Source: Octopus sinensis (Eukaryota). Taken from it: 64,000 bases of DNA. Shown here one piece after another: positions 33,302 to 61,107 of this stretch. The position numbers were made by a program, and so were the translations under genes. How positions within the stretch are numbered: the first letter of the stretch is position 1; each line of letters begins with the position of its first letter. A model generated the notes under the pieces. It was not told the origin of the DNA. It saw only the letters and a program-made list of their open reading frames with translations, and made no database searches. The stretch is from assembly GCF_006345805.1 (NCBI RefSeq), contig NW_021836177.1, positions 13,441 through 77,440 on the forward strand, read 5' to 3'.

Positions 33302-33385
33302 ATGGATGTAAATAAGATTATAAGCAACATTGTGGATGGGGACTTTAAAGATGTCGAACAACTTATCAAAGAAAATCCTGAAACT
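33302..33385 (+). CDS. Coding exon 1 (MDVNKIISNIVDGDFKDVEQLIKENPET), N-terminal ankyrin cap
   Basis: Pyrimidine tract plus AAG acceptor at 33299, ATG at 33302, 84 nt, donor GTAAGT at 33386, phase 0. Confidence 0.8.
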
Positions 33386-33539
33386 GTAAGTTTACTTTAT
33401 ATTGCTTCCTCAATGTTAAATGTTTGTTTATTATTTTATACACAATATTAAATGTTCCTAAATAACCAGATATATTTGTCCATAATATTTCATTTCTTTC
33501 TTTACCTCTTTCCTCTAATCCTCATCATTGTCACTTTTT

Positions 33540-34440
33540 ATAAATATTCAACCAGACAATGAGGTATGCCAGAATTGATGGAATGTGAGTGAGAGAGAAA
33601 CCCATCCTCACACACTGCAATGGAGTATTCTGGCAGGAAATATTCAGTCCAAGAGATGAGGGACAGATGGATTCTATAGATAAATGGTGACTTTGTCAAG
33701 AAATTCTCTTGCCATACACAGTTGAAGGTTTTACCGATGTCAAAGGCTACACTATTTCTTTTGCAGAAGTTGTCAAACATAACCAAAACATAGGAATCAG
33801 ACCCCTGCTTGAAACAGCTTTATGGAACTGTTCTGGGGCTCATTGAATAGAGAAAGATACCCAAAGGGACAAAGATGATGGTTGTTTATGACTTTTTACT
33901 TCATAATTGAAATATTGGAAGTTAGAATGACTGGCTGGTAGTCAGCAGATAGGACACTATCAGCAAGAATTATAAAACAGGGCTTCTCTAAGAGAGTAAT
34001 GCTACCCTTGGGTAGGGATTGCGAAGAATTTTATAAGGACCAGGGAGCCAAGGAGGCTATGGTGGTACAAATATATGAAACTCAATGTGTAGTTGAGTTT
34101 GGATCAGAGAACCATCATGGTTAGGGAGTGGTGGGTGGAATGATTCTGTAAAATCTATAGAGATACTCTTGGTAAGAGACCAGAAAATGAGGCTTTGATT
34201 TGGAAGGGAAGGCAGCTGACAAATGGTGAAATGCAGAAAAAACATCCTTTATTTTCTTGATGACCATCATACATGTATTTCAATGGTGGGTGAATGTCTG
34301 CCAGTTAGTGAGGGTAGGTGTTTTCCTCAAGGAGAAGTCGATAGTGTTGTTTGTACAGCTGTAATACAGTTGTGTATGAACCACTCACACCTTCTTAAAT
34401 ATTGTATGGCTACAAACTAATGTAAGCCCTGATACTGCTG
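33540..34440 (-). mobile_element. Old CR1/Jockey-group LINE RT remnant in intron 1
   Basis: VAFDIGKTFNCVW...INSGIP peptide, a degenerate AFDISKAFDRVW...SGVPQG. Confidence 0.6.
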
Positions 34441-34994
34441 CCGCATTTAGGCTCAAAATTCTGATCACTACTTTCATAATATTTCTTATTTTCTCCATTG
34501 TTTCTTTTCATTTGTGTCTACCTTTGCATAGTTGCTCATATTCAGTTGTGATTGGTGTCGTTCCAAAGATGTCACAGATGTTTAATTACAAGTAATTACT
34601 TTGTAATAGATTCAGTGACTAACATAAATAGATTTTCAATCTTTTCCTTGAGCTTAAGCATGAACTAAACAGTCTTTCTAAGCCTTTTCCACCTTGATTT
34701 ACCTGTGCTCTACACCTTTCTTGTAGATTTGCTTTCATTCTTTTCCAAGTAGATCCCACATTGCTGTTTCACCAGACATATGACATCTGAAGATCCATGC
34801 TTCATTTCAAACATCCTGTTCTTCTCTCACCATTTCTTAAATCTCCTTCATCATTATAGCATTAAATAAAAGTGCTACTATGCCAGACATCAGTGATAAC
34901 ACAGTGTAGAATTTCATGAGCTTTACCAGGGAATACTAAACTAAAATCTCTCTCCTTTGATATATTTTATATATCTTCTCTTTCTTCTCTTCAG

Positions 34995-35146
34995 GTCAAC
35001 CAAATAAACTCACACAGTAAAACTTTCTTAATGGCAGCTTGTGAACAGGGCAGCACAAGTCTAATAGCCTTCTTGATAGAATCTGGAGCCAATATGGACA
35101 TGAGTGACAAAGCAGGTCTGACAGCATTACATTATGCTGTGAAAAG
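34995..35146 (+). CDS. Coding exon 2, ankyrin repeats (KTFLMAACEQG...GLTALHYAVK)
   Basis: ttctcttcAG acceptor, GTAAGG donor, 152 nt, phase 0 to 2, ankyrin consensus. Confidence 0.92.
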
Positions 35147-36699
35147 GTAAGGCTTGAATTAACTAAAATCTTCAGATCTGCTTTTGTTTTGAAATTTTTT
35201 GCAATTCCAGACTATTTGAATATCCAAAGATACCATAATAGTGGCAGTGTGACACGATAACAGCATGATAGTAGTAACCAAATAACATCTTTTACTCATT
35301 TTCTCCATGAATCCTCTTCATTGAATCACCAAAATCTTTTTCGTTATTTGTTGTCAAAACAGATTATTTTTGTTTTCGAGATATTCTTTGAGATCCAACA
35401 GTTCTTAAAATTGACCCAGTGTGATTCAGTGTCTTCTCTTCATATTGATTATGGAGAGATCGATCAATTTTTCTCCAAAGAAAATGTTATTTGAGATCTA
35501 AAGCAACAAGAAAGATTCTCAAGCTTGTTTTTGCAGTAAATAATCTGTAAATTTCTTACAGAAATTATTTCTCACCTCCATCAGCAACTCAACACATTTT
35601 GAGATCTATTATATTTTGAATTGTGCTTCATAAGGTCATCTCTGGACAATAAAACATGTTTTGAAGTTCTTGTTAGTTTCTATAGCTTCTGCAGTCACAA
35701 ATTGTTTCAGAATTTTGCCCAAACACACAAACACACACACACACCATCATCGTCATCGAATGTTCCTTTTCCTTTGATAGGAACAGACAAGTCAGAAGAC
35801 CACACCAAACACTACTGTCTGCTTAGGTTTGGTTTCTATGGCTGGACGACCTTCCTAACACCAACCACTTTGCAGAGTGTACTGGATGCCTTTTACATGC
35901 CATCAGAACCAGTGAGGTCACCAATTAATTGCAAGACAAAGACCTCTCGACTGGTTGAGGTGGTGGGATGGGGGAGCTAATATTGCTGGAGAGAAAGGTG
36001 TCTTGCATTAGAAGAGGGACATGGCTCCTTCAGATGGAGAAGACAGAGGAGGGAAACACTAGGTTAAAATCTTGTGTTTGGCCCAAGCAAAGAAAAAAGG
36101 AAAAACATAGTGCAATAGGTGTGAAACAACATGTAGTAAACGAATACTCTTACTCTTTTACTTGTTTCAGTCATTTGACTGTGGCCATGCTGGAGCACCG
36201 CCTTTAATCGAGCAACTCGACCCCGGGACTTATTCTTTGTAAGCCCAGTACATATTCTATCAGTCTCTTTTGCTGAACCACTAAGTGACAGGGACATAAA
36301 CACACCAGCATCGGTTGTCAAGCAATGCTAGGGGGACACAGACACACAAACACACACGCACACATATATATATATACATATATACGACGAGCTTCTTTCA
36401 GTTTCCGTCTACCAAATCCACTCATAAGGCTTTGGTCGGCCTGAGGTTATAGTAGAAGACACTTGACCAAGGTGCCACGCAGTGGGACTGAACCTGGAAC
36501 CATGTGGCTGGTAAGCAAGCTGCTTATCAAACAGCCACTCCTGCGCCTATGGAAAAAAAAAATATGGCGAACGGGAGGTGGGGAGACGACTCGGAAATTC
36601 AAATCTCACCACTTCCCCATTCGTCGGCGATCCTATGACCACGAGTCCACTGCCCTAACCACTGGGCCATTGCGCCTCCACTCTATATCTATATATATC

Positions 36700-36732
<33 letters not shown>

Positions 36733-36898
36733 CTATATATATTATATATATATATCTATATATATATATATATTATATATATATATATATATTTTAAAAT
36801 AATAATAATAAATAAAAATAAATATTAGGGAATAATCCAAATTTACAGGGAAAAATCAGACTTAGGATTGAATCCAATTTTATAGTAAATATTATATT

Positions 36899-37127
36899 AT
36901 ATTAAATTAGAGACAAAACCACTATTAGGCAAATCAAACAAAGAAAGACTTAAGCCAATACATAAAATAATTTATATAAATTAAAATTTAACAATAATAA
37001 TAATAATAATAATATAATTATTATTATTATTATATATTGTTAAATTTTAATTTTTATAAATTATTTTATGTATTGGCTTAAGTCTTTCTTTGTTTGATTT
37101 GCATAATAGTGGATTTGTCTCTAATTT

Positions 37128-37130
<3 letters not shown>
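36899..37130. repeat. ~230-bp AT-rich palindrome formed from a repeat family also at 23776-23910 and 30040-30110
   Basis: Arms of about 95 bp are near-perfect reverse complements around an (AAT)n/(ATT)n centre. Confidence 0.85.
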
Positions 37131-37187
<57 letters not shown>

Positions 37188-38608: not shown

Positions 38609-38766
38609 ATACAGGCATGCACGCACACAGACATATATATATATATACACACGCGGCTGTAATATATATATATAGGTTTTTATGCATTTAATTGAACACG
38701 AGTGTATATTTAATGTAATTGTTAAGTGAATGTCTGTGATGTTTTATGTATTTTCCTTCCTTTTAG

Positions 38767-38923
38767 ATATAAAATTGATGCAGTGGCCTCCTTAGTTTCC
38801 AGGGGAGCAAATGTTAATAAGCAGACCTCACTGGGCAACACACCTCTACATCTGGCTGTGAGGAAGAACTATGAAGATGTAGTCAAAGTCCTGTTAAGTA
38901 GCAAAGGAAATAACATTTTACAG
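38767..38923 (+). CDS. Coding exon 3, ankyrin repeats (GANVNKQTSLGNTPLHLAVRKNYEDVVKVLL)
   Basis: ccttttAG acceptor, GTTAGC donor, 157 nt, phase 2 to 0. The TPLH motif is in ORF 38726..39037. Confidence 0.93.
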
Positions 38924-39284
38924 GTTAGCGAATACATTTATATTTGTGTATATAGATATGTATATATATGTATGTGTGTGTTATATGTATATGATGTATA
39001 CATACAGTTTAGTGCCCCAAATTTCGTTTCTTCATAACTGATGATCCATATTATTTAAAATAAAACTTGCTGCAAGACTTCCTTTTCTACCCCACAAAAA
39101 AACCACCCTTTCTTTAAATTTTTTTCCCCGACACAAATCCCGCTTTTCGGTTAAGGGAAATACGAATCTGCAAAAAAATTGGGGTTTTGGCAAAAAAATT
39201 CTTTGAATAAGCAAATTTAGGTGAAAATGGTGGTGGTGGTGGTGGGGGGACTCTTTTGAAAGTTGCTCATTTCCTTGTGTGAGA

Positions 39285-39325
<41 letters not shown>

Positions 39326-39534: not shown

Positions 39535-41419
39535 GTCAATCAGCGAAACAATAATGGTTGGACACCTCTACATCTTGCCTCTAATCAAGGACACACAGAC
39601 ACAGCTAAACTTCTCCTACAACAAGATGGCACTGATGTGAGGGTGGTGGACAACGATGGTTGGACACCTCTACATCGTGCCTCGTATAATGGACACACAG
39701 ACACAGCTAAACTTCTCCTACAACAAAATAACACTGATGTGAGGGTGGTGGACAACGCTGGTTGGACACCTCTACATCGTGCCTCGTATAATGGACACAC
39801 AGACACAGCTAAACTTCTCCTACAACAAGATGGCACTGATGTGAGGGTGGTGGACAACGCTGGTTGGACACCTCTACATCGTGCCTCGTATAATGGACAC
39901 ACAGACACAGCTAAGCTTCTCCTACAACAAGATGGCACTGATGTGAGGGTGGTGGACAACGCTGGTTGGACACCTCTACATCGTGCCTCGTATAATGGAC
40001 ACACAGACACAGTTAAACTTCTCCTACAACAAAATGGCACTGATGTGAGGGTGGTGGACAACGCTGGTTGGACACTTCTACATCGTGCCTCGTATAATGG
40101 ACACACAGACACAGCTAAACTTCTCCTACAACAAGATGGCACTGATGTGAGGGTGGTGACCAACGCTGGTTGGACACCTCTACATCATGCCTCGTATAAT
40201 GGACACACAGACACAGCTAAACTTCTCCTACAACAAAATGGCACTGATGTGAGGGTGGTGGACAACGCTGGTTGGACACCTCTACATCGTGCCTCGTATA
40301 ATGGACACACAGACACAGTTAAACTTCTCCTACAACAAAATGGCACTGATGTGAGGGTGGTGGACAACGCTGGTTGGACACCTCTACATCATGCCTCGTA
40401 TAATGGACACACAGACACAGCTAAACTTCTCCTACAACAAGATGGCACTGATGTGAGGGTGGTGGACAACGCTGGTTGGACACCTCTACATCGTGCCTCG
40501 TATAATGGACACAGACACAGTTAAACTTCTCCTACACACAAATGGCACTGATGTGAGGGTGGTGGACAACGCTGGTTGGACACCTCTACATCGTGCCTCG
40601 TATAATGGACACACAGACACAGTTAAACTTCTCCTACAACAAAATGGCACTGATGTGAGGGTGGTGGACAACGCTGGTTGGACACCTCTACATCGTGCCT
40701 CGTATAATGGACACACAGACACAGTTAAACTTCTCCTACAACAAAATGGCACTGATGTGAGGGTGGTGGACAACGATGGTTGGACACCTCTACATCGTGC
40801 CTCGTATAATGGACACACAGACACAGTTAAACTTCTCCTACAACAAAATGGCACTGATGTGAGGGTGGTGGACAACGCTGGTTGGACACCTCTACATCGT
40901 GCCTCGTATAATGGACACACAGACACAGTTAAACTTCTCCTACAACAAAATGGCACTGATGTGAGGGTGGTGGACAACGCTGGTTGGACACCTCTACATC
41001 GTGCCTCGTATAATGGACACACAGACACAGTTAAACTTCTCCTACAAACAATGGCACTGATGTGAGGGTGGTGACAACGCTGGTTGGACACCTCTACATC
41101 GTGCCTCGTATAATGGACACACAGACACAGTTAAACTTCTCCTACAACAAAATGGCACTGATGTGAGGGTGGTGGACAACGATGGTTGGACACCTCTCCA
41201 TCTTGCCTCTAATCAAGGACACACAGACACAGCTAAACTTCTCCTACAACAAAATGGCACTGATGTGAGGGTGGTGACCAAATATGGTTGGACACCTCTA
41301 CATCTTGCCTCTAATCAAGGACACACAGACACAGCTAAACTCCTCCTACAACAAAATGGCATCGATGCCAATAAAGCGGACAATGATGGTGACACTCCTC
41401 TCCATGTGGCAGTTCAAGG
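39535..41419 (+). CDS. Coding exon 4: 19 ankyrin repeats in a 102-bp (34-aa) tandem array; frameshifted as assembled
   Basis: ttttttAG acceptor and GG|GTAAGT donor. G-x-TPLH motifs start at 39556+102n up to 41388. Deletions of 2 nt (~40510) and 1+1 nt (~41045, ~41073) split it into ORFs 39637, 40493 and 41163. Restoring 4 nt gives 1889 nt, which is the required phase 2. Confidence 0.93.
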
Positions 41420-42207: not shown

Positions 42208-42751
42208 CAAGGGGGTACCCAAAAGTGGCCGGAAACGTTTCTGTAGGGCAAGGCCATTGAAGTTCAGGCTTCTGCTGCTAGAAGCCACTTGATGCGATAC
42301 TCAGGCATCAGCCTGCCAAGCGGCATCTTTGAGGATGGTGCTGTTACCATGTGGTGCATCTTTGTTTTGTAGGGCTTCTCCCCTGTTCGAGTTTTGCAAT
42401 GGCTGAAATGAAGGATCAGCTTGCTTCCATGAAATTCTGTTTTGTGCTGGAGAAAACTGCAGCCGAAACAGTTGTCATGCTTCAAACAGTTTACGAGGAC
42501 ACTGCCATGATGCCACGAGCAAAACACAAAATCACGAGTGGTTTTCATGCTTTTCGAATGGTCACTTGTCACTTGAGGTCCAACCTCATTCAGGGCAGTT
42601 CCAGCACTGCTACAAATAGTGGGAAACATGTCTGGGTCGACGCATTGCTTCAAATGTGGACTACTTTGACGGTGATAATAGTGTTAATACGTAAAACTAA
42701 GCAAAGAAAATAATATTGCAAAATTCTGGTTCCTTCTGGGTCCCCACCTCA
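42208..42751 (+). mobile_element. Internally deleted mariner element (a 5' mariner fragment also at ~52484-52725)
   Basis: Imperfect ~28-bp TIRs flanked by TA. KFCFVLEKTAAETVVMLQT resembles the mariner N-terminal HTH. Confidence 0.7.
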
Positions 42752-43455: not shown

Positions 43456-43492
43456 GCAACAATATGGTGTGGTATCGTTGATGCTGGCCCAG
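43456..43492 (+). CDS. Coding exon 5 (G-QQYGVVSLMLAQ), completes the last array repeat
   Basis: tttcAG acceptor, GTTAGT donor, 37 nt, phase 2 to 0. Continues GDTPLHVAVQG as ankyrin helix 2. Confidence 0.82.
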
Positions 43493-44559: not shown

Positions 44560-45820
44560 TCGTTAATCCATTATCATCAGTACATGATGCATCACTTCCT
44601 TTCTCCTCTCTCCCTGCCTAACTCAACGGATTAACTACCCTTACTGTATTTGTCTACCTAACTTATTTACCTGTATTTGTTTAACATGGCTTTGCATGAA
44701 TGCCGGGATGCAACACCCTCCACTGTTGGTGGTGACAATACCTGATTAACTCCTCTTTACAGGTATCCATACTAACACCTCTGTGCTAATGCCAGCACAA
44801 CACCCATGTCCAGTGGTGTTAGCAAGCGTTACATGAATGATGCAGGATTAAATGCAAGGACAACTGCTAATGACATGCTGGCAGGCAAATGCTAATAACA
44901 ACCTTTTCAGACGCTGATAGCTGCAGCCAATGTAGACACAGCACTGTCAATGTAAGCACATGCAACAAGTATCTCGTCTTATGTGCACCCCCCCCCCCAA
45001 AAAAAACTGCCCCTAGAAGGTCTGTCAAATGAACTGAAGGGCTACTTCTATGACACTCTTCTGCTGGCCACTTCAAAGATAAATGACCATGACCTTCGTG
45101 GTTGGTGATTTCAATGGACGTGTTGGGCAGTACCCAGGTATCTTCCATGGGCTACATGGTGGGACACAGAATTGTGGGAACAAAAACCATAGCCACCATG
45201 TACACCATGGAAGTCCCCTGCGTGTTGTCCAACGTGCCCATTGAAGTCGCCAGCCACAAAGAGAAGGTCCCTGTCATTCATTGACGAGGTAGTCTGCAAG
45301 AGGGTGTCATAAAATCAGTCTTTCTGTTCATCAGGTAGCCCTGGCTGAGGGTCATAAACCGAGATAATGGTTGCTAATCCATGTTGCAGCACTAATCTAA
45401 ACTTAAGTATTCCATCACAGACTCTGACTATCTCGATTACCTTATCAGCCCATTTTTCTGCCCCCGACTCCATCAGTGTTCCCTACTCAGAAAATCTTAT
45501 ACTTATGTTCTTTGCCTGTGAAGAACTTAGCAGAACTTCCTCTCCACCTTCTTGGATGCAGCACAAATCTACATGTCTCTGTTCAAGCATGTTAACAATA
45601 TCACCAGACCTACCTTTCAGTGTGCCGACGTTGAGAGTACTAACTCTGAGGGTGTTGAAGGTATGGGTCCACGAGACCCTGGGATGGGGGACAGCAGCAT
45701 CATGTACCTGAAAAGAAAGCTTGCATTTGGCAGAACCCATAAACATACAATAGTCTTCAACCTGCAACACTACACCTACACCATCATTTTATGCACTACA
45801 TCATCACTACATTACATAGG
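44560..45820 (-). mobile_element. Internally deleted RTE remnant (endonuclease N-terminus plus 3' pieces) in intron 5
   Basis: TLNVGTLKG, LCCIQE and DLLFVAGDFNGH peptides in ORFs 45483..45770 and 45111..45299. Confidence 0.8.
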
Positions 45821-46285: not shown

Positions 46286-46389
46286 ATATATCGCTCATAT
46301 TATATATATAAATACTTTAATAGTATTAATATTATTTTATACAATGGAACACTTAATATAAATTCAGTATATAATATTATTGAATATAT

Positions 46390-47601: not shown

Positions 47602-48182
47602 ATATATATATATATGTATTGTATCACCAATTATTATGACACGATACTGTTTACACTATAACCTTGTAGTAACAATAAAACATATTACGGATCAGGGTAA
47701 CAACAACAATCCATACACAAACCAACAAACAATGAAAACAACACCTTATGACTTCCTGCAATTAACACCTACTCTCTCTGGTCTCTCACTCAGACTGCTA
47801 CTATTCATAGTCGTTCAGTCAAGTCTGTTCTTGCATGGGTTCTTGTGACTCTCACCACAACATGTAATCGAGTCCAGGACTTATTCTTTGTAAGCCTAGT
47901 ACTTATTCTGTTGATCCTTTTTGCCAAATCGCTAGCTTACAGGGATGTAAACACACCAGCATTGATTGTTAAGCGATGTTGGGAGGACAAACACAGACAC
48001 ACAAACACACACACACACACATATACGATGGGCTTCTTTCAGTTTTTGTCTACCAAATCCACTCACAAGGCTTTGGTCAGCCCGAGATAATAGTACAAGA
48101 CACTTGCTCAAGGTGCCATGCAGTGGAACTAAACCCGGAATCATGTGGTTTGTAAGCAAGCTATTTACCACAGCCACTCCTG

Positions 48183-48221
<39 letters not shown>

Positions 48222-48561
48222 AAATATATCTATATATATATATATATGTGTTTGTGTGTATCTCACTTCCATAACATTCATGTATATGTGTGTGTATGTA
48301 CAGGAATGTTAAGGATGTGGACACTAACCAACTCACCTGTTTTATGAACCCCTTATTAATATAGCAACATCATAATTCTTCTTTACTAGTTTTGATCTGC
48401 TAATTATATGTCACTCTTGTTCTGCTCCCCTAAATTTACTATAGTGAGAGATAAATATAGATTAGGATGAAAACAATCTGTTTAAGACCTCTTAATAGAT
48501 TATCATGTCCCTTACACATATCCCATGTACATTTTCAATTTCTATTTTTACTTCCACAAAG

Positions 48562-48777
48562 GATTCAGTGAAACTGGATATCGAGAATCATAAGAAATGA
48601 CACCATTGATGGAAGCCGTTTCAGGGTTGGGGCCCACCTCGGAATAATCCATAAACTTATTATAAATGGTGCAACATAAATGCTGTCAACAATGATGGCA
48701 ATAATTGTTTGCACCTCTCAATAATAAAAAAAGAGATGTTCCATTCTGAGGTGGAACCCATTCCCATTTTAGATGAG
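48562..48777 (+). CDS. Coding exon 6, ankyrin repeats (KMTPLMEAVS..GHLGIIHKLIINGANINAVNNDGNNCLHL); internal indels
   Basis: cacaaAG acceptor and GAG|GTAAGT donor. The ankyrin reading needs +1 A at AAGAAATG and at GCAACATA, and correction of a G/C-run segment near 48625-48635. Confidence 0.78.
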
Positions 48778-49816
48778 GTAAGTTTTAAAAGTTGTTTGTG
48801 AATATGTGTGTGTGTGGTTGGCATTAGGAAGGGCATGCAACCGCAGAGACTATGCCAAAACTGGCAATTGGTGCCTGAGCAGCTCTGCAGCTGCCCAGCT
48901 TCTGCCAAACTATCCAACCCATGCCAGCATAGAAAACGAATGTAAAATGATGATGAGGAGGATGTGTGTATGTGTGAATGAGAGAGAGAGAAATAGAGAA
49001 ACAGGCAGACATTGTTTGCTATTTTCTTTCACTCCCATCCACTTCTCTTCCTTTAGTATTAATAATTCAGTTTCTCCTGATAGCACACTAGTTGTATTAT
49101 GTAACTAACAATATTCCATCTTTTTCACCTTCAAAAGCATGGCACTCCCACTGTAAAGAAGGTAACCCATCTTATATGTGTCATGTAAACACTGCCATAA
49201 CTGTATGAAGGAGAGGTGACCAACGACAGAGATAAGTCTTTAAATTTAAGAAAGAGAAATTCACAAACTGTTTTAAATATCGAATTTCAAGTTAAACGAG
49301 TTGAACTGTGTTAATTGCTAGAAAGCATATTTCATTATTCTTTTTCAAAGAAAGGAAAAGGAAAATAAATTCGTTTATGGACAATTAAATTTAAAGAAAA
49401 TATATTCATGGACTTTGAAGAAAGTTTCTTTTATCAGTATGATAATGAATATATAACTGAGTTTATTCAAAGTTGATAATTAGGGTTCCAAATATTGCCA
49501 GGGCTTGGACTTTGTGTGTATATTGACTACAGTAATACCCCTTGCAATGATTGTAATGAAGGGAGATGTGATGAGAATGAATTTACATTAAGATGTGTGC
49601 ACAAAATTGTAATGCCACGAGATTGTATGTATGACGATGTAACTAGACAGATAGTCATAGAGGCCCTTTGTTACCAACAAAGATAGAAGCTCTCTGAACT
49701 TTGCCCTGCTTAATCTTATTCTAGCAGCTATGCTCTTGGCGCATCCACCTCCACTACTGACTTGATTACCTAGATAACAGTAGCTATCACTACTCTAGGT
49801 GCATATATATATAGTG

Positions 49817-49880
<64 letters not shown>

Positions 49881-50893: not shown

Positions 50894-51069
50894 TGCTGCA
50901 GAGAGCTCCAACTGGACATGGATAGGAGGCTCTCTGGAATAGTAGTTTTGAGTTACCTTGCCAGCCAAGGAGCCAGCTTATACCATCATAATAATAAGAA
51001 AATGACCCCATTGGACTACATAGAAAATCAACATTTGAAAGAAAAATTAAAAACATTTTTACAATCACT
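50894..51069 (+). CDS. Coding exon 7 (CCRELQLDMDRRLSGIVVLSYLASQGASLYHHNNKKMTPLDY...), last ankyrin-like repeat
   Basis: tttgcAG acceptor, GTAAGT donor, 176 nt, phase 0 to 2, open frame (ORF 50888..51073). Confidence 0.9.
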
Positions 51070-52062: not shown

Positions 52063-52200
52063 GTGTCGGTGGTGTCAAGAAAAAAGGCTACTGTCACACT
52101 CCATCCATGTCAACATACCGTTACTTGTCAGAATTGCTGTTCTCAATGACATTTAAGCAATGCCCCATATGTCATCAACACATACACCGGAAGTGGATTT
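52063..52200 (+). CDS. Coding exon 8, RING finger (CRWC...PCQH...CQNC...CPIC); indels as assembled
   Basis: ttccacAG acceptor and GTAAG donor. The C3HC4 ligand spacing appears after adding one A in the A-run at ~52080 and one at CAATG ~52146. The 3' end needs a further indel correction to give phase 1. Confidence 0.82.
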
Positions 52201-53048
52201 GTAAGAACATTCTTTCTTGATCTGTCTGTTGTCTCATTAACTTTCTGGTATGGAATAATGCATTTCATATTGTAGTGGAGACATGCAACTCCTTGTTTGT
52301 AACTATATATTATGAACACTTGTTATAATGTTTGCCATCCTTTTAGACATTTTATACTCACACTCGTTAGTTTTTAGATGTGATTAATGCTAAAAGAGAC
52401 ATTGTTTTCTGACTCTTTCACCTTTTGGCTTTACTTTTGAGTTGATTCGTTTTAATTCGAACATGAAGCCTGGTCATTGCTCCAAGGTGGTATCAGAAAG
52501 TTCACGGACTAGTTCTGTAGCATGCCAACAGATGGCTGCACACCGTTGCGCGCACAGTGAGAGCTAGCAATGACTTTCATGAGGCAGTGTGCTGGGTGAC
52601 ACCACTGCGTTTACTTCAAAAGTTGTGAAATTTGTGCTTTTGTGGTCATTTGTAGGCTGTAGTCTGCAATTTTCTAATGGGCAGGAACAAATAACCAATG
52701 TGAAATTTTGCGTTAAACTTGTCCAGCAAAGACATAAGAAAGAAACAACAAAACTAAAAGAAAAAGAGTGTTATGAAGTGATAACTGAATGAGAGAATTT
52801 CAGAATTGTTAGATTAGTATATAGGATGTCTTAAGAGAAAGATGAGATTTAGAAAGGTTTGCCTATTTTGTTGTGGTTCTAAATATTGAACTATTATTTA
52901 GTAACAGCTTAGAAAGTGTTGACCGAAAGCATAGTGGTCACCAATTGACTATTGATGATATGAATGCCTTACAATAATGGAATATAGATTATTAAAAGAG
53001 ACAAAGAAATTTTACTATGAAGTATAAACTTTGAAATGCTTATTTCAG

Positions 53049-53099
53049 TGTGTCCAAAGTCTGAAGAAGAAGCAGCAAAGGCAGTTGCAGAGTCTGTTG
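53049..53099 (+). CDS. Cassette exon 9 (CPKSEEEAAKAVAESV), phase 1-1, paralogue of exon 12
   Basis: atttcAG acceptor, GTTG|GTGAGT donor, 51 nt, open. Confidence 0.65.
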
Positions 53100-53214
53100 G
53101 TGAGTATAAAATAACTGTAATTGATTTCTATAAATTTTACCTTCACCTGAGTTATATTATTTGTGTGAGTGTCTGAGAACAGGTTCCATTCCTAATTTCC
53201 AATTCTTATTTCAG

Positions 53215-53263
53215 TGTGTCCAAAGTCTGAAGAAAAGCACCCGGGCGGTTGTAGAATCTGTTG
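53215..53263 (+). pseudogene. Cassette exon 10, tandem copy of exon 9, 2 nt short (pseudo-exon or assembly error)
   Basis: First 20 nt identical to exon 9, same splice sites, 49 nt so not frame-preserving. Confidence 0.5.
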
Positions 53264-53278
53264 GTGAGTATAAAATAA

Positions 53279-53515
53279 CTGTAATTGATTTCTATAAATT
53301 TTACTTTCACCTGAGATATATTGTTTTTTTGAATGACTGTATTGATTTTCCTATAACTTTTACTGTTCACCTGAGATATATTGTTTTTTGTGAATGACTG
53401 TAATTGATTTCTATAAATTTTACTTTCACCTGAGATATATTGTTTTTGTGAATGACTGTAATTGATTTCTAAAATTTTACTTTCACCTGAGATATATTGT
53501 TTTTTGTGATGACTG
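53279..53515. repeat. ~59-bp minisatellite, 4 copies, derived from intron sequence just downstream of the exon 9/10 donors
   Basis: Units start CTGTAATTGATT at about 53279, 53337, 53398 and 53456. Confidence 0.85.
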
Positions 53516-53852
53516 AGAACATTGTAGGAAAGAGAAGACACAATGAAGAAAAACAGTGTTATCAAGTGATAATTGAATGAGATATTCGCAGAAATTTAGA
53601 TTATGTAGGCTGTCTTAATAGAGAGAGAAAAGGGGAGGAATTTAGGAAGGTTAGTCTATTTTGTGTGTCCCTGAATATTGAGCTTTAACATAGTATCACG
53701 GTAGAAAGTATTAAAATATTAGCCAAACCATAGTGGTCACCAGTTGACCATTGATAATAGGAATGCCTGACAATAATAAAATATAGACTATTAAGAAAAA
53801 TAATTTAAAAAAATTTAACTATACATTGTAAACTTTTAAATATTTATTTCAG

Positions 53853-53923
53853 AGAGTTTATTTTGGAGGAAACCGCTTCCATAGCACATCGAAGAAAAGT
53901 GGCAGTTAAGCAACAGCAAGTTG
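53853..53923 (+). CDS. Cassette exon 11 (EFILEETASIAHRRKVAVKQQQV), paralogue of exon 12, 1 nt short
   Basis: tatttcAG acceptor, CAGCAAGTTG|GTGAGT donor identical to exon 12, 71 nt versus 72 nt. Confidence 0.5.
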
Positions 53924-54779
53924 GTGAGTATAAAATAAGTCCGTAAGTGATTTCAAATTAGTTTTACTTCACTTGAGCATATTTTGTTTTTCAGAAGGAC
54001 TGAGAACAGGTTCCATTCTTAATTTTCAATTAATAATTCTTTTGAAGAAATTGCTGAAATTTAAGAGAATGCCCACCAAGGTTAGAACAGACAAAAGTTA
54101 ATGATGTCTTTTGGAATAGAGAACTAAAATATGTTATTTGGTTGGGGGTGAACAAGTGCTTTAACGACAAGGCTTTCGTTTTGCATTTATACTGTGTTTA
54201 CTAATAAGTTGTTGTTTTAGCAGGAGTCTCTCATAATCTGGCAGACTTACAATGAAATGCATTCCCAGTGTCAACATCCTGTCTTTTTGTCACTGATAGG
54301 AAATCTATCATTACATCCATTAAACACATTGTCTTTATCGAAGTAGAAAACACTGGCTTGCTACTGAGATAACCATTGCTTCTTTGTTGTTTTTCTCTCT
54401 CTCTCGCTTTCTCTTTTTGATATATACTAGATGCAAGATACAATAAATGACATTGTCCTCATCATTTATCATCAGATAAATGTTCCTGTGGAATGGATGG
54501 TGGAGGGTGGGGGTGGGTCACTGTCCAAGTCAGTTCTTATTAGCAGTTACTGTCCACCTTCATTGGTTGAGGATCATGTCCCACTAAAACATTCCAGCTT
54601 TCCTATGATGGTCTACCCTTCCTAACACCATCCACTTTATAAAGGATCCTGGGTACATTTTATTGTGGCACAAATACAAGAAAGATTGTTATGTATTCAA
54701 CAAAATTAAACATTCCTCTCGAACTTATGCAAAGAAATATCAGACATGTTGAAAGAGGAAAGGAAAGTAAATGAATTAG

Positions 54780-55342: not shown

Positions 55343-55379
<37 letters not shown>

Positions 55380-57300: not shown

Positions 57301-57669
57301 ATCATTGCCCACCTGGAAAGAAATGTGCTTCATTAAGAAGTCTTCTAACATCTCAAATACATGTGGCACATATATAAGAAACAAAAAATGAAAACTAAAA
57401 GAAAAACAGTGTTATCAAGTGATAATTAAATGAGATAATTGTAACATTGTTAGATTATTTAAGATGTCTTAATAGAGAAAGGAAATTGAGGAAGGTTAGT
57501 CTATTTTGTTGTAGACCTAAGTATTGAGCTATTTACCTGTTGACCAAAAACATAGTGGTCACCCGATGACCAGCGATGATGATAGGTATGTCCCACTATA
57601 TAATAAAATATAGATTATTAATAAAGAATTTTTACTCTCAAGTATAACAGTTGCAAATATTTATTTCAG

Positions 57670-57741
57670 AAACTCCAAAGTTAGAGGAGAAGTGTCTCCA
57701 AGATGTTGCAAAATTGTTAGGAGTCAACTGGCAGCAAGTTG
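57670..57741 (+). CDS. Coding exon 12, N-terminal part of death domain (TPKLEEKCLQDVAKLLGVNWQQV)
   Basis: atttcAG acceptor, GTGAGT donor, 72 nt, phase 1-1. Matches the death-fold pattern L-x2-VA-x2-LG-x2-W. Confidence 0.87.
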
Positions 57742-58699
57742 GTGAGTATAAAATAACAGTACTTAATTGATTTCAATAAGTGTCAGCTTTTGTTTGTCAG
57801 CATGACTAAGAGAAGATCCCATTCCTACTTTCCAATTGAAAGGCTAGCTGTAAAGTGATTCTATTAAAGGTGTTGGTGTTATGTGTAGTTTCGTTCTAGA
57901 TGGGTGATGGACATTGTTATTGTTTTACGTGTTTATTTACTTCACTTGTTACACGAACTGTCAGCATTCGGCGTAGTGATACATATATACTTTAGACACA
58001 GTTCGTACTGTTTACTAACAAAATAGTGCCAAAAGTGGGGATGTATTCTACACACGTATACCTACGTATACACATAGATATGAATGTGTAACAGTTGGTA
58101 TTACTGAAACATCATAAAATAGCCACCGAGATTAGCGGGGTCAGTAAAATGGCTAAATTAGAGGACATAATCGATTTAATATTGTCTTTTGAGAGAGCAA
58201 ATTAAAATATGTCATTTAAGGGTAAACTGGTGAGTTAATGATAATTTTTTTTTTGTTTGTTTTACATTTTTACTAAGTTTACGTTTTGTTGTTTTTTATT
58301 TGCAAAATGCCTGTTTTAATCAGAAATACGATGGAAAGTGTTTCAGGTGGGACATCTCTGTCTTTCAGTTGGTAGTACAGGACTACATCATTAAGTGCAT
58401 CCTTTTTTACATGCTCCTGTGTATAGTGAGTGGCATGTTGCAGTCACTCCACTGTCCAGTGTCCATTTAGTTGTGAACCACTCTTCACTGACATGTAATG
58501 GTTGATTGTACGTAGGTGGATGGTGTTTATGTTGGTGATTCCTGTCTTCTTTCCTGCAAGTTAAAACTCTCCTCTTTGCTTGGTTTAACTTAACACCTCT
58601 CTATTACACTGGGTAACAACGATTTTTGTCCATGGATAACAATTGTTATTTCCAATTTGCTTAACCCTAGAAAATACGAGAATGGCTAGTATCTCCTTC

Positions 58700-59971
58700 A
58701 AACTTTGCTTTCGTCACAATATATACCTTGTAGACCTCACACATTTCAGCTGATGTTGTTTCACAGTGCTTTTACGCTTTTGTCTTGATAAATTCACCAC
58801 AGACACAGCAGAATGTATCTGCCAGATGCTTACAACCTCTTGATGCCATCTGTGATGAATGCAGTTCTTGGATAGCTAGAAATAAACTGAACTGGTGATC
58901 TTATGATCCCTTTTTTTACACTGGTATCTATGTTGCCAGAACGCTCTAGAAATTCTTGGAAAGTTTAGAAATTTCTTGATGATAGTTCTAGAAAATTCTG
59001 CTTCAGTGACTCAGCACTGAATCTGTCTGGAAATAGGTTTCAAAACATTGATGTCCAGGTGACAAAAGCAACAGTTGAAGGGAACAGATGTCCTTTCCTT
59101 TGATTTCTTGATGGAAGTAAATAGGAAATAACATCATCATCATCATTGTCGTCGGCTGTGGTTGAGACAATGGAATTTACTATGCTACGCCAGACTTCAC
59201 GGTCCATCATAGCATACGGAGGTCCTGTTGCTGGATGCCTGTATCCCTGGAAATAACACTTATTCATTCGGTCATTCAACGTTCATTGACACTTGCGTGC
59301 TATTGAAAAGTCAGCAAATTGGGTCAATGGATCGCACACAGAGTGAATGTGTGCTCTTCTCTGTGGTCCTGTCTCATGAATGAACCTCTTTTAAACTGAA
59401 TGTGACTGGTGACGAGAAATGGGTTCTCTATAAATATGTCAAGCAGCGAAGACAGTGGGTAAGGAAAGGAAATATGAAAGGTTTAGTCCTCTTTGAACTT
59501 TAGGCCCCACCAAATGAAAACAAAGAATCTACTGCAAGCAGCTTGAGTGGCTTAAGTCAGCACTAGAAGCAAAGCGACCATCTTCAGTTTCAAGACGAAG
59601 GTGTTCTTCTTCCATCAGGATAATGCTCGGCCACAATCAGCGAGGATGACATTCCAAAGGCTGGAGTAGTTTTGAATCGGACATTCACAGGACATTGCCC
59701 CATCTGATTATCATTTATTCCACAGTCTTCAAACTTATTTGGACGTAATATGTTTACCTGTAGAGGAGGTCAGAACGGTAGTAGAGAAGTATTTTTCGTC
59801 ACGGACAGTCAATTTGGAAGAGGGGCCTTGCAAGTGCACCAGATAGATGGAAGAGCATTGTAGAAAATTAAAGAGAGTATATTTTAGGTTAAAAAGAACT
59901 TTGTTTATCTTAATTTTGAAGAATAAAAGATGTATAAAACAAATGCATTATTATTTATAGGATGACCCAAT
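58700..59971 (+). mobile_element. Decayed mariner transposase remnant with right TIR (similar right end at ~19560-19650)
   Basis: VTGDEKW, HQDNARPH and DIAPSDYHLF motifs. Ends ATTATTTATAGGATGACCCAAT. The 5' boundary is uncertain. Confidence 0.8.
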
Positions 59972-60901
59972 GCTTTGTGTAGTTGAGATCATTCTGGTAT
60001 CTTGTCTCTTTGTATTTGAATTGGCCCAGATATGCCTAATAGTACTGGTATTGTTTGATAGTTCAAACCATATCTTGTAGATATTTCTAACTCTTGATAT
60101 GCCTTAGTTATCAATTATTCAGAAGAGGAGAAGCATCACAGACAACTATTTCAGGCATTGACCATGGAATGTTATAAAATGGCCAAAATGGGATTCCTTT
60201 GAAGGATCTCTGGAGTAAGGATACTAAATAGGATGTATAGTCTAGAGATTTGGGAATATCTCCAGGTTGAGCCAGTTCCTCTCCACATCTCTGGTACTAT
60301 GGACATGTGTTGCAGGAACAAATGACAAGACAGATTCTTCAAGCCAAACCAATGGAGCAGGGGTCCTAGGGGTAGATCACGAACTAAATGGTTGGGTAAT
60401 AGCCATTGTCTTAGCTGTTTATGTTTAGGAACCCAACCAAAAGCTCTAATGACGGCTGCTTCTGATAGGACCCTATGGAGGAGATGCCTGAAGACTCTGT
60501 CTTTACAATCCTCCCAAGAATATTGAGCAGAGACAATGGATGGGTGGATCAAATGGATTGACTGTTGATGGTCTATATTCATTCTTTAGGTTCTCCATAC
60601 ACTTTTGCCTACACAAACACTTCTCCTACCATCTGTTTACCATAAATTTTCGCAAGTGTAATTTTCAATTAATTTTCTTTAAAATCTTCACCATTTTCAT
60701 CCTGTATTTCCACCTCTTCGTTATTATTTAATTAACATTCTAAGAAACAGAGAACAACATCTTTTATTTATTTTTTTATGTTTCTTAACTATTTCTCATT
60801 GACATAATTTATTTGTTACATAATTTATTTGTTACAGTACACATCTTTTATGTAATCGTTAATGATTTTGAAATTATTTCTTATTGTTTTATGTTTTGCA
60901 G

Positions 60902-61107
60902 GCAGGAATTTAGGAATCAAAAATGTTGATCTGGGGATTATCAGGACTGACTATCCTCATAACACTAAAGAGCAGAGCTTCCAGATGCTGCACACATGGT
61001 ACACAAGTTGTGATCCAGAGATGCGAACATTCAAAACACTCAGAAAAGCTCTTGAGGAAGCTGAATGCTTTGAGGCACTTCAATGTCTACCATCAGAAGA
61101 AAAGTGA
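60902..61107 (+). CDS. Terminal coding exon 13, remainder of death domain (GRNLGIKNVDLGIIRTDYPHNTKEQSFQMLHTW...LRKALEEAEC) and stop
   Basis: ttttgcAG acceptor in phase 1, TGA at 61105-61107. Matches the death-domain pattern LG...I...YP...EQ.FQML..W.......L..AL. Confidence 0.9.

What the first reader, a model, noticed from the sequence alone, without database searches (positions are those of the whole stretch)
33302..61107. Ankyrin(~25)-RING-death domain protein: candidate innate-immune or cell-death receptor-ligase
The ORF track shows only fragments, but the exons join into ANK array, C3HC4 RING, then death domain. The last ankyrins plus RING resemble the C-terminal half of Mind bomb-type E3 ligases, yet the N-terminal Mib/ZZ modules are absent and a death domain is appended. 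Ankyrins bind ligands, RINGs ubiquitinate and death folds nucleate signalling complexes (established). A sensor-ligase-adaptor in one chain is my inference. I do not recognise a named gene with this architecture.
Basis: partly seen in the sequence, partly recalled or inferred. Interest (0 to 1): 0.8.

Follow-up and report, generated by a model that had tools for sequence, protein, structure and literature searches.

The report
Octopus ankyrin–RING–death-domain ligase gene
This is one copy of an octopus-only, multi-copy family of Mind-bomb-like ubiquitin ligases with a long ankyrin array and a death domain; the family is already in databases but unstudied, and this copy's reading frame is broken by about 15 small indels that look mostly like assembly errors.

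Summary
Thirteen GT–AG exons on the + strand (33302–61107) encode about 25 ankyrin repeats, one C3HC4 RING, three 17-aa linker cassettes and a death domain. Pfam scores are above cut-off: RING 38 bits, Death 38.9 bits.

As written, the window does not encode this protein. About 15 small indels break the frame in the ANK array, exon 6, the RING exon and two linker exons. Two Octopus vulgaris loci collinear with the window are intact at all seven exon-6 and RING-exon sites. Introns show the same excess of 1-bp homopolymer deletions. I read most indels as long-read assembly error and keep a true pseudogene at about 25–30%.

The gene belongs to a family found only in Octopus bimaculoides, O. sinensis and O. 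vulgaris. RefSeq/GenBank name its members "MIB2-like", "MIB1-like", "ankyrin-3-like" or "uncharacterized". Full-length paralogue models of 505–563 aa show the same ANK–RING–linker–DD order. I found no paper on it.

The last ankyrin matches MIB1 (E 1.5e-9). The RING is closest to cIAP1/2. The death domain is closest to RAIDD, RIPK1 and ankyrin death domains.

Variation among the near-identical 102-bp ANK units sits at binding-surface positions.

The function is inferred: a ligase brought into death-domain complexes by its own death domain.

The parts
33302..33385 (+). Exon 1: ATG plus N-terminal ANK cap (MDVNKIISNIVDGDFKDVEQLIKENPET), donor GTAAGT, ends in phase 0
   Evidence: The same start is used by paralogue model P0182 (MDVNKIISKIQNGDFEDVERLIKENPDK). 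It is conserved with its donor in O. vulgaris locus L003.
34995..35146 (+). Exon 2: ANK repeats 1-2 (VNQINSHSKTFLMAACEQG...LTALHYAVK), ends in phase 2
   Evidence: Pfam ANK. tblastn with P0022 gives 79% and with P0036 gives 100%.
38767..38923 (+). Exon 3: ANK repeat 3 (…NTPLHLAVRKNYEDVVKVLLSSKGNNILQ)
   Evidence: Against L001 there are 0 synonymous and 9 non-synonymous differences, at ANK binding-surface positions.
39535..41419 (+). Exon 4: array of 19 near-identical 34-aa (102-bp) ankyrin repeats. The frame is broken three times: a 2-bp loss near 40514 and 1-bp losses near 41047 and 41076.
   Evidence: TRF reports period 102, 17.8 copies and 96% match. Unit spacing is 102 bp except for two 100-bp units. 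Pfam ANK scores E 1e-92.
43456..43492 (+). Exon 5 (labelled E4b in my notes): second helix of an ANK repeat (QQYGVVSLMLAQ), phase 2 in and phase 0 out
   Evidence: It is 100% identical to L001.
48562..48777 (+). Exon 6: two ANK repeats (DSVKLDIENHKKMTPLMEAVS.AHLGIIHKLIINGANINAVNNDGNNCLHLS...FHSEVEPIPILDE). The frame is broken three times: -1, +5, -1.
   Evidence: Both O. vulgaris loci are intact at these sites.
50894..51069 (+). Exon 7: Mind-bomb-like last degenerate ANK and C-cap (CCRELQLDMDRRLSGIVVLSYLASQGASLYHHNNKKMTPLDYIENQHLKEKLKTFLQS)
   Evidence: It is 100% identical to L001. Family profile A3 matches the MIB1 ANK domain 8v0e_A at E 1.5e-9 over this segment.
52063..52200 (+). Exon 8: C3HC4 RING (CRWCQEK·ATVTLHPCQHTVTCQNCCSQ·MTFKQCPICHQHIHRK·SGF). 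The frame is broken four times: -1, -1, -2, -1.
   Evidence: Pfam zf-C3HC4_3 scores 38 bits against a cut-off of 27. The alignment to L001 and L003 shows both intact. The nearest solved RINGs are cIAP1 (4e-9), cIAP2, MYLIP and XIAP.
53049..53099 (+). Exon 9 (L1): 51-bp phase 1-1 linker cassette (VCPKSEEEAAKAVAESV)
   Evidence: Paralogues carry 0 to 6 such cassettes.
53215..53263 (+). Exon 10 (L2): second linker cassette, with two 1-bp losses
   Evidence: L001 reads VCPKSEEKAAQAVVESV.
53853..53923 (+). Exon 11 (L3): linker exon (L001 reads ESLNLEENRFHSTSKKVAVKQQQV), with three small indels in the window
57670..57741 (+). Exon 12: death domain, helix 1 and the start of helix 2 (ETPKLEEKCLQDVAKLLGVNWQQV)
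   Evidence: Pfam Death. It is 99% identical to L001. tblastn with family members gives 92-100%.
60902..61107 (+). Exon 13: the rest of the death domain plus the stop codon (GRNLGIKNVDLGIIRTDYPHNTKEQSFQMLHTWYTSCDPEMRTFKTLRKALEEAECFEALQCLPSEEK*)
   Evidence: Pfam Death scores 38.9 bits against a cut-off of 22.6. The nearest solved death domains are CRADD/RAIDD, RIPK1 and ankyrin. A cluster of non-synonymous differences from L001 lies at 60919-60976.

Best explanation
The locus is one copy of an Octopus-specific, tandemly duplicated family of Mind-bomb-like RING E3 ligases. Its conceptual product is about 1,100 aa. In order, it has an N-cap, 25 ankyrin repeats (19 of them a recently amplified, near-identical array), one IAP/MIB-type C3HC4 RING, a flexible linker built from alternatively usable 17-aa cassette exons, and a C-terminal death domain.

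Shown here:
- the exon structure, the domain identities and the family membership;
- intact reading frames in two collinear O. vulgaris loci at the exon-6 and RING-exon sites where the window is broken;
- an indel spectrum typical of unpolished long-read assemblies.
I therefore take most of the roughly 15 frame breaks to be assembly artefacts, and the real gene to be probably intact.

Inferred mechanism:
- The concave face of the ANK array binds a protein partner or substrate.
- The RING recruits an E2~ubiquitin.
- The death domain docks the ligase into oligomeric DD assemblies of the RAIDD, RIPK1 or FADD type, or oligomerises the ligase itself so that induced proximity activates the RING.
- Components of a cell-death or innate-immune complex are then ubiquitinated.
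In vertebrates MIB2 reaches oligomeric RIPK1 through its N-terminal MZM module (PMC5912950). In this family that module is missing, and the appended DD would supply the recruitment function directly.
For: Exons, phases and domains.

Family:
- All 32 + 52 significant hits of two protein searches are Octopus. Many carry ANK + PF13920 + PF00531.
- In the exhaustive representative search I looked up 14 of the short RING-DD-covering hits. All 14 were Octopus.
- The full-length paralogue P0182 scores Death 45.1 bits and RING 39.4 bits in my own Pfam scan.

Collinearity: O. vulgaris OX597842.1 (L001) is 96-98% identical to the window. A second tandem locus, L003, is also collinear.

Indels as assembly error:
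- Over 21.7 kb the window differs from L001 by 250 substitutions and 163 indel events.
- There are 87 one-bp deletions in the window (66 in homopolymers) against 27 one-bp insertions.
- All 7 indels in exon 6 and the RING exon are absent from both O. vulgaris copies.
- There are no nonsense substitutions, and all splice sites are intact.
- The L001 conceptual CDS from exon 5 to the stop codon is fully open.

Resemblances:
- MIB1 ANK domain, E 1.5e-9.
- cIAP1 RING, 4e-9.
- DD to CRADD 2.4e-4 and RIPK1 2.7e-4.
- An AlphaFold model of paralogue P0011 has pLDDT 81, with the DD near 90 and a disordered 156-166 linker. Its DD superposes on the FADD, ankyrin-G and RAIDD death domains at TM 0.77-0.82 and rmsd 1.4-2.0 Å.

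Binding array: among 29 clean ANK units, variation concentrates at unit positions 1, 3, 5, 10, 13 and 14. The scaffold is nearly identical even at synonymous sites.

MIB2-RIPK1 link: PMC5912950.
Against: - No transcript evidence could be obtained. No cDNA-type contig carries a family protein.
- No protein encoded by the window itself appeared among the hits. That is what one would expect if the source annotation calls this copy a pseudogene.
- One frame break is a 5-bp insertion (48621-48631), which is not a typical homopolymer error.
- Coding dN/dS against L001 is about 1 overall: 6 synonymous and 25 non-synonymous differences.
- The O. vulgaris assembly also has single frame breaks in this family: a 103-bp ANK unit in L001 and a 1-bp loss in exon 2 of L003. 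Some copies may really be decaying.
- The GenBank annotation of O. vulgaris splits the locus into an ANK gene and a RING-DD gene.
- All functional statements are inference from domain content.
Confidence: 0.6

Rival explanations
1. This copy is a true unprocessed pseudogene. It would be a decaying member of the tandem family whose frameshifts are real in the animal, so that no ANK-RING-DD protein is made from this locus.
For: - About 15 frame-breaking indels lie in about 3.3 kb of coding sequence.
- One of them is a 5-bp insertion.
- No protein of the window was returned by any search.
- dN/dS against L001 is about 1.
- Indel density in exons is similar to that in introns.
- Other copies in O. 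vulgaris also carry single frame breaks.
Against: - The indel:substitution ratio across the whole region, introns included, is 163:250. From general knowledge this is several times the usual biological ratio of about 1:8-10.
- The indels are biased 87:27 toward 1-bp deletions, mostly in homopolymers. That is a technical signature.
- There are no nonsense substitutions, and all 24 splice signals are intact.
- Substitutions are not spread evenly. They cluster in exon 3 and in a 60-bp patch of the last exon, while exons 5, 7, 9 and 12 are 99-100% identical to L001. This looks like gene conversion or selection rather than decay.
Confidence: 0.27
2. The death-domain exons, or the RING-DD part, belong to a separate transcription unit from the ANK array. 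In that case the single-chain architecture is an artefact of chaining exons across tandem paralogues.
For: - The O. vulgaris GenBank annotation has an ANK gene ending inside the array and a separate RING-DD gene, P0008, with an unrelated N-terminus.
- Predicted isoforms exist without a DD (P0013, P0045) and with a DD exon taken from elsewhere (P0036, P0033).
- A 5.4-kb gap separates the RING exon from the first DD exon.
Against: - The O. vulgaris split coincides with a frameshift in its ANK array, a 103-bp unit with a stop at L001:2998.
- Phases match through all 12 introns.
- The L001 sequence from exon 5 through the RING and linkers to the DD is one open frame.
- Models from three species, on several chromosomes, independently give ANK-RING-linker-DD.
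- O. bimaculoides model P0032 begins inside the RING exon, in a shifted frame, and continues into the linker and DD exons. This indicates that these exons are spliced together.
Confidence: 0.07
3. It is the octopus orthologue of canonical Mind bomb (MIB1 or MIB2), acting in Notch-ligand endocytosis.
For: RefSeq names paralogues 'MIB2-like' or 'MIB1-like'. The last ANK repeat matches MIB1.
Against: - Neither this gene nor the full-length paralogues have a Mib/Herc2, ZZ or REP module.
- There is one RING followed by a DD, rather than 2-3 C-terminal RINGs.
- There are dozens of copies per genome on several chromosomes.
- No relatives were found outside Octopus.
Confidence: 0.01

Closest known systems
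Mind bomb E3 ligases (MIB1, MIB2)
   Same: - An ANK block ends in a degenerate last repeat and is followed by IAP-type C3HC4 RING(s). The family profile hits the MIB1 ANK domain 8v0e_A at E 1.5e-9.
- One family member (P0291, O. sinensis) still has two tandem RINGs and no DD, as MIB2 does.
- MIB2 ubiquitinates the DD kinase RIPK1 in TNF signalling (PMC5912950).
   Different: - There is no N-terminal MZM (Mib/Herc2-ZZ-Mib/Herc2) or REP substrate-binding module.
- There is a single RING, and it is not at the C-terminus.
- A cassette linker and a death domain are appended.
- The ANK array is greatly expanded.
- The family is multi-copy and was found only in Octopus.
cIAP1/cIAP2 (BIRC2/3) and mollusc BIR-DD-RING IAPs
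   Same: - The RING is closest in sequence to cIAP1 (4e-9) and cIAP2.
- A death-fold domain and an IAP-type RING lie in one chain.
- cIAPs work inside DD-nucleated receptor complexes.
- Oyster IAPs with TII-DD-RING architecture are described in PMC8917759.
   Different: - There are no BIR domains; ANK repeats take their place.
- The death-fold domain is a true DD (PF00531) placed after the RING. In IAPs a CARD or DD comes before it.
ANK + death-domain proteins (ankyrin-R/B/G, ANKDD1, DAPK1, NF-kB p100/p105)
   Same: An ankyrin array and a C-terminal DD lie in one chain. The DD resembles ankyrin death domains (E 3.7e-4; TM 0.78 and rmsd 1.4 Å to the ankyrin-G DD for the paralogue model).
   Different: None of these has a RING. 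Ankyrins also have ZU5-UPA modules, DAPK1 a kinase and ROC-COR, and NF-kB a Rel homology domain.
RAIDD/CRADD, RIPK1, PIDD and FADD death domains
   Same: These are the nearest solved death domains by sequence (2.4e-4 to 1e-2) and by predicted fold. They suggest a canonical oligomerising DD.
   Different: These are adaptor or kinase death domains. No partner of the octopus DD is known.
Designed ankyrin repeat proteins (DARPins), as an analogy only
   Same: A near-invariant repeat scaffold carries variation at module positions 3, 5, 13 and 14 (plus 1 and 10). From memory of Binz et al. 2003, the DARPin randomised positions are 2, 3, 5, 13, 14 and 33.
   Different: The octopus array is a natural germline sequence with few variant states per position. 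No evidence of binding diversity was tested.

Membership tests
Mind bomb (MIB1/MIB2) E3 ligases | N-terminal MZM module (Mib/Herc2 - ZZ - Mib/Herc2) and REP domains that bind substrates | tested here: not met
   Pfam finds only ANK on exons 1-3 and on the rest of the conceptual protein. Full-length paralogues P0182 and P0291 have only ANK, RING and Death. A motif scan of all six frames of the window found nothing, though its patterns came from memory and it is a weak test. Exon 1 starts with an ATG that is shared with the paralogue starts.
Mind bomb (MIB1/MIB2) E3 ligases | ANK block with a degenerate terminal repeat, directly followed by zf-C3HC4_3 RING(s) | tested here: met
   Profile A3 against the PDB hits the MIB1 ANK domain 8v0e_A at E 1.5e-9 over profile positions 41-89. 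The RING scores 38 bits for PF13920.
Mind bomb (MIB1/MIB2) E3 ligases | Two or three RINGs, the last at the extreme C-terminus | tested here: not met
   There is one RING, followed by about 55 aa of linker cassettes and a 90-aa DD. Only paralogue P0291 keeps two RINGs.
Mind bomb (MIB1/MIB2) E3 ligases | Conserved low-copy orthologue across animals | tested here: not met
   There are dozens of Octopus-only clusters on several chromosomes, and tandem paralogues about 130 kb apart in O. vulgaris.
Death domain (DD subfamily of the death-fold superfamily) | Sequence match to PF00531 above the curated cut-off | tested here: met
   The window DD scores 38.9 bits against a cut-off of 22.6. Paralogue P0182 scores 45.1 bits.
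Death domain (DD subfamily of the death-fold superfamily) | Six-helix bundle fold | tested here: met
   This was tested on paralogue P0011, not on the window protein. In the AlphaFold model the DD has pLDDT near 90. Foldseek gives TM 0.82 to FADD DD, 0.78 to ankyrin-G DD and 0.77 to RAIDD DD, at rmsd 1.4-2.0 Å.
Death domain (DD subfamily of the death-fold superfamily) | Homotypic DD-DD oligomerisation | not testable with these tools
   This needs pull-down, SEC-MALS or a co-structure.
RING-HC (C3HC4, IAP/MIB type) E3 ligase | Eight zinc ligands with C-x2-C-x(10-11)-C-x-H-x2-C-x2-C-x(8-9)-C-x2-C spacing | tested here: met
   All ligands are present in the window once the 4 frame breaks are bridged, and they lie in an uninterrupted frame in L001 and L003. 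The ligand columns are invariant or at least 90% conserved in the family alignments.
RING-HC (C3HC4, IAP/MIB type) E3 ligase | E2-dependent ubiquitin transfer | not testable with these tools
   This needs an in vitro ubiquitination assay.
Inhibitor of apoptosis proteins (IAP) | At least one BIR domain | tested here: not met
   Pfam scans of the window pieces and of the paralogues show no BIR.
Unprocessed pseudogene | Frame-disrupting mutations that are real in the genome | tested here: inconclusive
   About 15 indels are present in the assembly. The region-wide indel spectrum points to assembly error. Reads were not available.
Unprocessed pseudogene | Nonsense substitutions, lost splice sites, evenly spread neutral substitutions | tested here: not met
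   There are no in-frame nonsense substitutions, and all introns are GT-AG. Differences from L001 are clustered rather than even.

The most novel reading that the evidence does not exclude
The family is a cephalopod-specific intracellular immune or cell-death receptor system. In this reading, the homogenised ANK array acts as a germline-diversified recognition surface: a natural DARPin-like scaffold whose binding positions and repeat number vary between paralogues and between close species. Ligand binding would trigger DD-nucleated assembly and RING-dependent ubiquitin signalling from a single polypeptide.
Probability: 0.15. Interest if true: 0.8.

Novelty: new variant of a known kind. Interest (0 to 1): 0.45.

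Why it matters
Very little is known about how cephalopods organise intracellular innate immunity and regulated cell death. This family offers a concrete, testable entry point. It is large and was found only in Octopus. Each member joins a long, variable ankyrin binding array, an IAP/MIB-type ligase domain and a death domain in one chain.

It also illustrates a specific evolutionary route. The recruitment function that vertebrate MIB2 obtains from its MZM module may here have been replaced by a fused death domain, with cassette exons setting the spacing between RING and DD.

On the practical side, the result is a warning for annotation. Near-identical tandem paralogues and internal repeats leave long-read assemblies full of small indels. 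Real genes then look like fragments or pseudogenes, and gene models become chimeric.

Tried and rejected
1. My first reading was that the gene ends at an in-frame TGA just after the RING (52215-52217), and that the RING donor plus the DD acceptor give TAA. I rejected this. Both effects come from the 2-bp and 1-bp losses at 52194 and 52201. In L001 the exon ends in phase 1 with G.

2. The exhaustive representative search with the whole-family profile A1 was swamped by giant ANK proteins.

3. The NCBIfam scan gave only sub-threshold ANK matches to bacterial effector models and was uninformative.

4. The PDB sequence search with the full-length paralogue was dominated by DARPins, ankyrins and TRPA1 and was uninformative for MIB. 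I replaced it with the sub-profile A3.

5. I looked for cDNA-type contigs carrying P0177, P0172 or the window's last-exon ORF. The results were only a genomic record, or none at all.

I replaced it with a regex scan for Mib/Herc2 and ZZ motifs written from memory. This is weak and found nothing.

7. Literature searches for MIB2, Mind bomb, death domain, ankyrin and RING together with octopus, cephalopod or mollusc found no description of this family.

8. I tested whether O. sinensis locus L002 (P0177) is the window. It is not; only dispersed repeats match. The source species of the window remains unidentified. It is about 1.15% diverged from O. vulgaris at aligned bases.

9. I could not find the DARPin randomised-position numbers in the paper I opened. 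That comparison rests on memory.

Full report
**What is in the sequence.** The window is eukaryotic, with TA/CA microsatellites and transposon debris. It is collinear at 96-98% nucleotide identity with Octopus vulgaris chromosome OX597842.1 at 29.708-29.744 Mb, which I fetched as locus L001. On the + strand between 33302 and 61107 I find 13 exons with GT-AG introns and compatible phases:
- exon 1, 33302-33385: ATG and N-terminal cap
- exon 2, 34995-35146
- exon 3, 38767-38923
- exon 4, 39535-41419
- exon 5, 43456-43492
- exon 6, 48562-48777
- exon 7, 50894-51069
- exon 8, 52063-52200: the RING
- exons 9-11, 53049-53099, 53215-53263 and 53853-53923: linker exons L1-L3
- exons 12 and 13, 57670-57741 and 60902-61107: the death domain, with the stop codon at 61105-61107

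**Domain identity.** Pfam gives ANK families down to E 1e-92. It gives zf-C3HC4_3 at 38.0 bits (cut-off 27) and Death PF00531 at 38.9 bits (cut-off 22.6). Counting TPLH-type motifs gives 25 ankyrin repeats. Nineteen of them lie in exon 4 as a 102-bp tandem array (17.8 copies at 96% match by TRF). The conceptual product is about 1,100 aa.

**The frame is broken.** The ORF track is fragmentary for a second reason besides introns. About 15 small indels interrupt the frame inside exons:
- three in the ANK array: a 2-bp loss in a CACACAGACACAG stretch near 40514, and 1-bp losses near 41047 and 41076
- three in exon 6: -1, +5, -1
- four in the 138-bp RING exon: -1, -1, -2, -1
- two in L2
- three in L3

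An apparent stop right after the RING, and an apparent TAA at the RING-to-DD junction, are artefacts of these shifts. I first took them seriously. In L001 the RING exon ends in phase 1 with G. That gives GTG (Val) with the linker cassettes and GAA (Glu) with the first DD exon.

**Assembly error or pseudogene.** I aligned 21.7 kb of the window, mostly intron, with L001. There are 250 substitutions and 163 indel events. There are 87 one-bp deletions in the window, 66 of them in homopolymers, against 27 one-bp insertions. From general knowledge the usual biological indel:substitution ratio is about 1:8-10. The observed ratio is several times that and has a strong deletion bias, which is the signature of incompletely polished long-read assembly.

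Other evidence points the same way:
- Both O. vulgaris copies I could read are intact at all seven indel sites of exon 6 and the RING exon. These are L001 and a tandem paralogue about 130 kb upstream, L003.
- The L001 sequence from exon 5 to the stop is one open frame. That frame includes exon 6, which the GenBank model P0008 omits.
- The window has no nonsense substitution, and all 24 splice signals are intact.

Some evidence points the other way:
- One break is a 5-bp insertion.
- No protein encoded by the window was returned by any search.
- Overall dN/dS against L001 is about 1: 6 synonymous and 25 non-synonymous differences.

The differences are strongly clustered, however. Nine non-synonymous and no synonymous changes fall in exon 3. 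A 60-bp patch of exon 13 carries 15 mismatches per 200 bp against a background of 1-3%. Exons 5, 7, 9 and 12 are 99-100% identical. The window's patch in exon 13 matches paralogue P0022, and the exon 3 region is closer to L003 than to L001. Gene conversion among tandem copies explains this better than uniform decay does. I put 'probably intact, sequence errors' at roughly 70% and 'true pseudogene' at 25-30%.

The O. vulgaris assembly has its own isolated frame breaks: a 103-bp ANK unit in L001 and a 1-bp loss in exon 2 of L003. The first of these coincides with the place where the GenBank annotation splits the locus into an ANK gene and a RING-DD gene.

**Family.** A search with the C-terminal half returned 32 proteins, all from O. 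sinensis, O. vulgaris or O. bimaculoides. They are named 'E3 ubiquitin-protein ligase MIB2-like' or 'MIB1-like', 'uncharacterized protein LOC115225502 isoform X5...X17', 'ankyrin-3-like' and similar. Many have precomputed ANK + PF13920 + PF00531. A RING-to-DD profile search returned 52 proteins, again all Octopus.

The exhaustive HMMER search of 1.84 billion representatives was dominated by giant ANK proteins. It did list about 20 short clusters that match through the RING and DD. I looked up 14 of them, and all 14 are Octopus.

Full-length models show the same architecture and the same kind of start as exon 1. They are P0182 (O. vulgaris CAI9744105.1, 563 aa, six linker cassettes), P0177 (O. 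sinensis XP_029652081.1, 505 aa) and P0172 (O. bimaculoides XP_014776763.1, 545 aa). My own Pfam scan of P0182 gives Death 45.1 bits and RING 39.4 bits. One member, P0291, has two tandem RINGs and no DD, which resembles the C-terminus of MIB2. The O. bimaculoides model P0032 starts inside the RING exon in a shifted frame and runs on through the linker and DD exons. This indicates that these exons are spliced together.

I could not obtain cDNA-type contigs. I found no paper on the family.

The 'Octopus-only' statement has two limits. Two of the searches have word-based sensitivity limits. I also do not know how many other cephalopod proteomes the collections hold.

**Resemblances.**
- A family profile of the segment from the last ANK repeats through the RING hits the solved MIB1 ANK domain (8v0e_A) at E 1.5e-9. 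The hit lies exactly over the degenerate last repeat encoded by exon 7. The same profile hits cIAP1 at 1.4e-9 over the RING.
- With the single sequence, the RING is closest to cIAP1 (4e-9), then cIAP2, MYLIP and XIAP.
- The DD is closest to CRADD/RAIDD (2.4e-4), RIPK1 (2.7e-4), ankyrin-1 and ankyrin-3, PIDD, TRADD and FADD.
- An AlphaFold model of the compact paralogue P0011 has mean pLDDT 81. It shows an ANK block, a RING (pLDDT about 80), a disordered linker (residues 156-166, pLDDT below 50) and a helical bundle (pLDDT about 90). The bundle superposes on the FADD, ankyrin-G and RAIDD death domains at TM 0.77-0.82 and rmsd 1.4-2.0 Å.
- No Mib/Herc2, ZZ or BIR domain is present.

**Features of the architecture.**
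- The three linker exons and the first DD exon share the acceptor ...TTATTTCAG and the donor GTTG|GTGAGTATAAAATAA...TAATTGATTTC. All are phase 1-1, and L1 and L2 are 51 bp. They look like serial duplications of an exon with its flanks, and they can be included or skipped without changing the frame. This explains the many predicted isoforms with 0 to 6 cassettes.
- The window has 19 ANK units in exon 4 against 15 in L001.
- Across 29 clean units from both assemblies, amino-acid variation concentrates at unit positions 1, 3, 5, 10, 13 and 14, numbering G as 4 and TPLH as 6-9. The remaining codons are almost identical, even at synonymous sites. From memory (Binz et al. 2003), positions 3, 5, 13 and 14 are among those randomised in designed ankyrin repeat proteins because they line the binding surface.
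- The nine non-synonymous differences from L001 in exon 3 fall at the same kind of positions.

**Mechanism.** This part is inferred.
- The ANK array is the binding module.
- The RING recruits an E2~ubiquitin. Most members keep an aromatic residue about 10 residues after the last Cys (...RKSGF). From memory, IAP-type RINGs have a tail Phe there that is needed for activity.
- The cassette linker sets the spacing between RING and DD.
- The DD places the ligase in oligomeric DD assemblies, or clusters the ligase itself.

In human cells MIB2 binds oligomerised RIPK1 through its MZM module and ubiquitinates it, including within its DD (PMC5912950). In the octopus family the MZM is absent and a DD is fused instead. 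That would give direct access to DD complexes. Molluscan IAPs with BIR-DD-RING architecture (PMC8917759) and vertebrate cIAP1/2 (BIR-CARD-RING, from general knowledge) show that pairing a death-fold domain with this RING type is an established design. The order RING-then-DD and the ANK array are what differ here.

**Verdict.** The single-chain architecture is well supported by phases, by the intact collinear O. vulgaris loci and by paralogue models. The sequence in this window is frame-broken, most likely by assembly error.

The gene is not unnamed. It belongs to an annotated but unstudied family found only in Octopus. The family is best described as a Mind-bomb-derived or IAP-like RING ligase that has lost the MZM module and gained a death domain. 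It fails the membership tests for canonical MIB and for IAP. I rate it a new variant of a known kind, of moderate interest. That interest would rise sharply if the variable ANK surface proved to be a recognition repertoire.

Noticed in passing
window 39535-41419 vs L001 2186-3668: The ANK array has 19 units in the window and 15 in O. vulgaris L001. Among the units, variation is confined to positions 1, 3, 5, 10, 13 and 14 on a scaffold that is nearly identical even at synonymous sites.
   Followed up: partly
window 60919-60976 (exon 13) and 38767-38923 (exon 3): Differences from O. vulgaris L001 form clusters, almost all non-synonymous. There are 15 mismatches per 200 bp in the DD exon, and 0 synonymous against 9 non-synonymous in exon 3. 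The window's DD patch matches paralogue P0022, which suggests gene conversion or diversifying selection.
   Followed up: partly
window 53015-53990 and 57636-57810: Linker exons L1-L3 and the first DD exon share nearly identical acceptor and donor flanks and are all phase 1-1. They look like serial exon-plus-flank duplications that created skippable 17-aa cassettes.
   Followed up: partly
L003 (OX597842.1:29577981-29619969) vs L001 (29707944-29744258): O. vulgaris has at least two tandem paralogous loci collinear with the window. The window is closer to L001 over exons 5-12 (about 98%) but closer to L003 around exon 3 (97.4% against 95.9%), which is a mosaic pattern.
   Followed up: partly
L001 9378-15259 vs window 46387-49848: Window 46387-47602 matches twice in L001, so O. 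vulgaris carries a duplication or insertion of about 2-3 kb in the intron before exon 6. The odd N-terminal exon of GenBank model P0008 starts in that region.
   Followed up: no
window 5829-8650 (+), 12130-14613 (-), 25281-25772 (+), 45083-45770 (-): These are copies and fragments of a non-LTR retrotransposon. Pfam finds an Exo_endo_phos_2 endonuclease and an RVT_1 reverse transcriptase with a 681-aa ORF. One fragment lies inside the intron between exons 5 and 6.
   Followed up: partly
window 9065-10156 (-): A 363-aa ORF carries a PIF1-like helicase and its 2B domain (Pfam 7e-60). It is probably a Helitron-type element remnant.
   Followed up: partly
window 1187-2176: A 42-bp tandem repeat keeps an open frame, (MVYDQNSGNLLDCS)n, for 329 codons.
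   Followed up: no
window 27430-27870, 36145-36555, 47867-48201, 61477-61840, 63057-63421: A SINE-like dispersed repeat of about 400 bp is present in several copies in both orientations. It is also abundant in the O. sinensis and O. vulgaris loci that I fetched.
   Followed up: no
window 59384-59860 and 42333-42710: By eye these stretches look like mariner/Tc1-type transposase remnants (for example FHQDNARPQSA and IAPSDYHLFHSLQ) inside introns. Pfam found nothing at E 1e-4 for 42333-42710, and the other stretch was not scanned.
   Followed up: no
window 24000-26000: The G+C content drops to 23.5% across a long TA-rich microsatellite tract.
   Followed up: no
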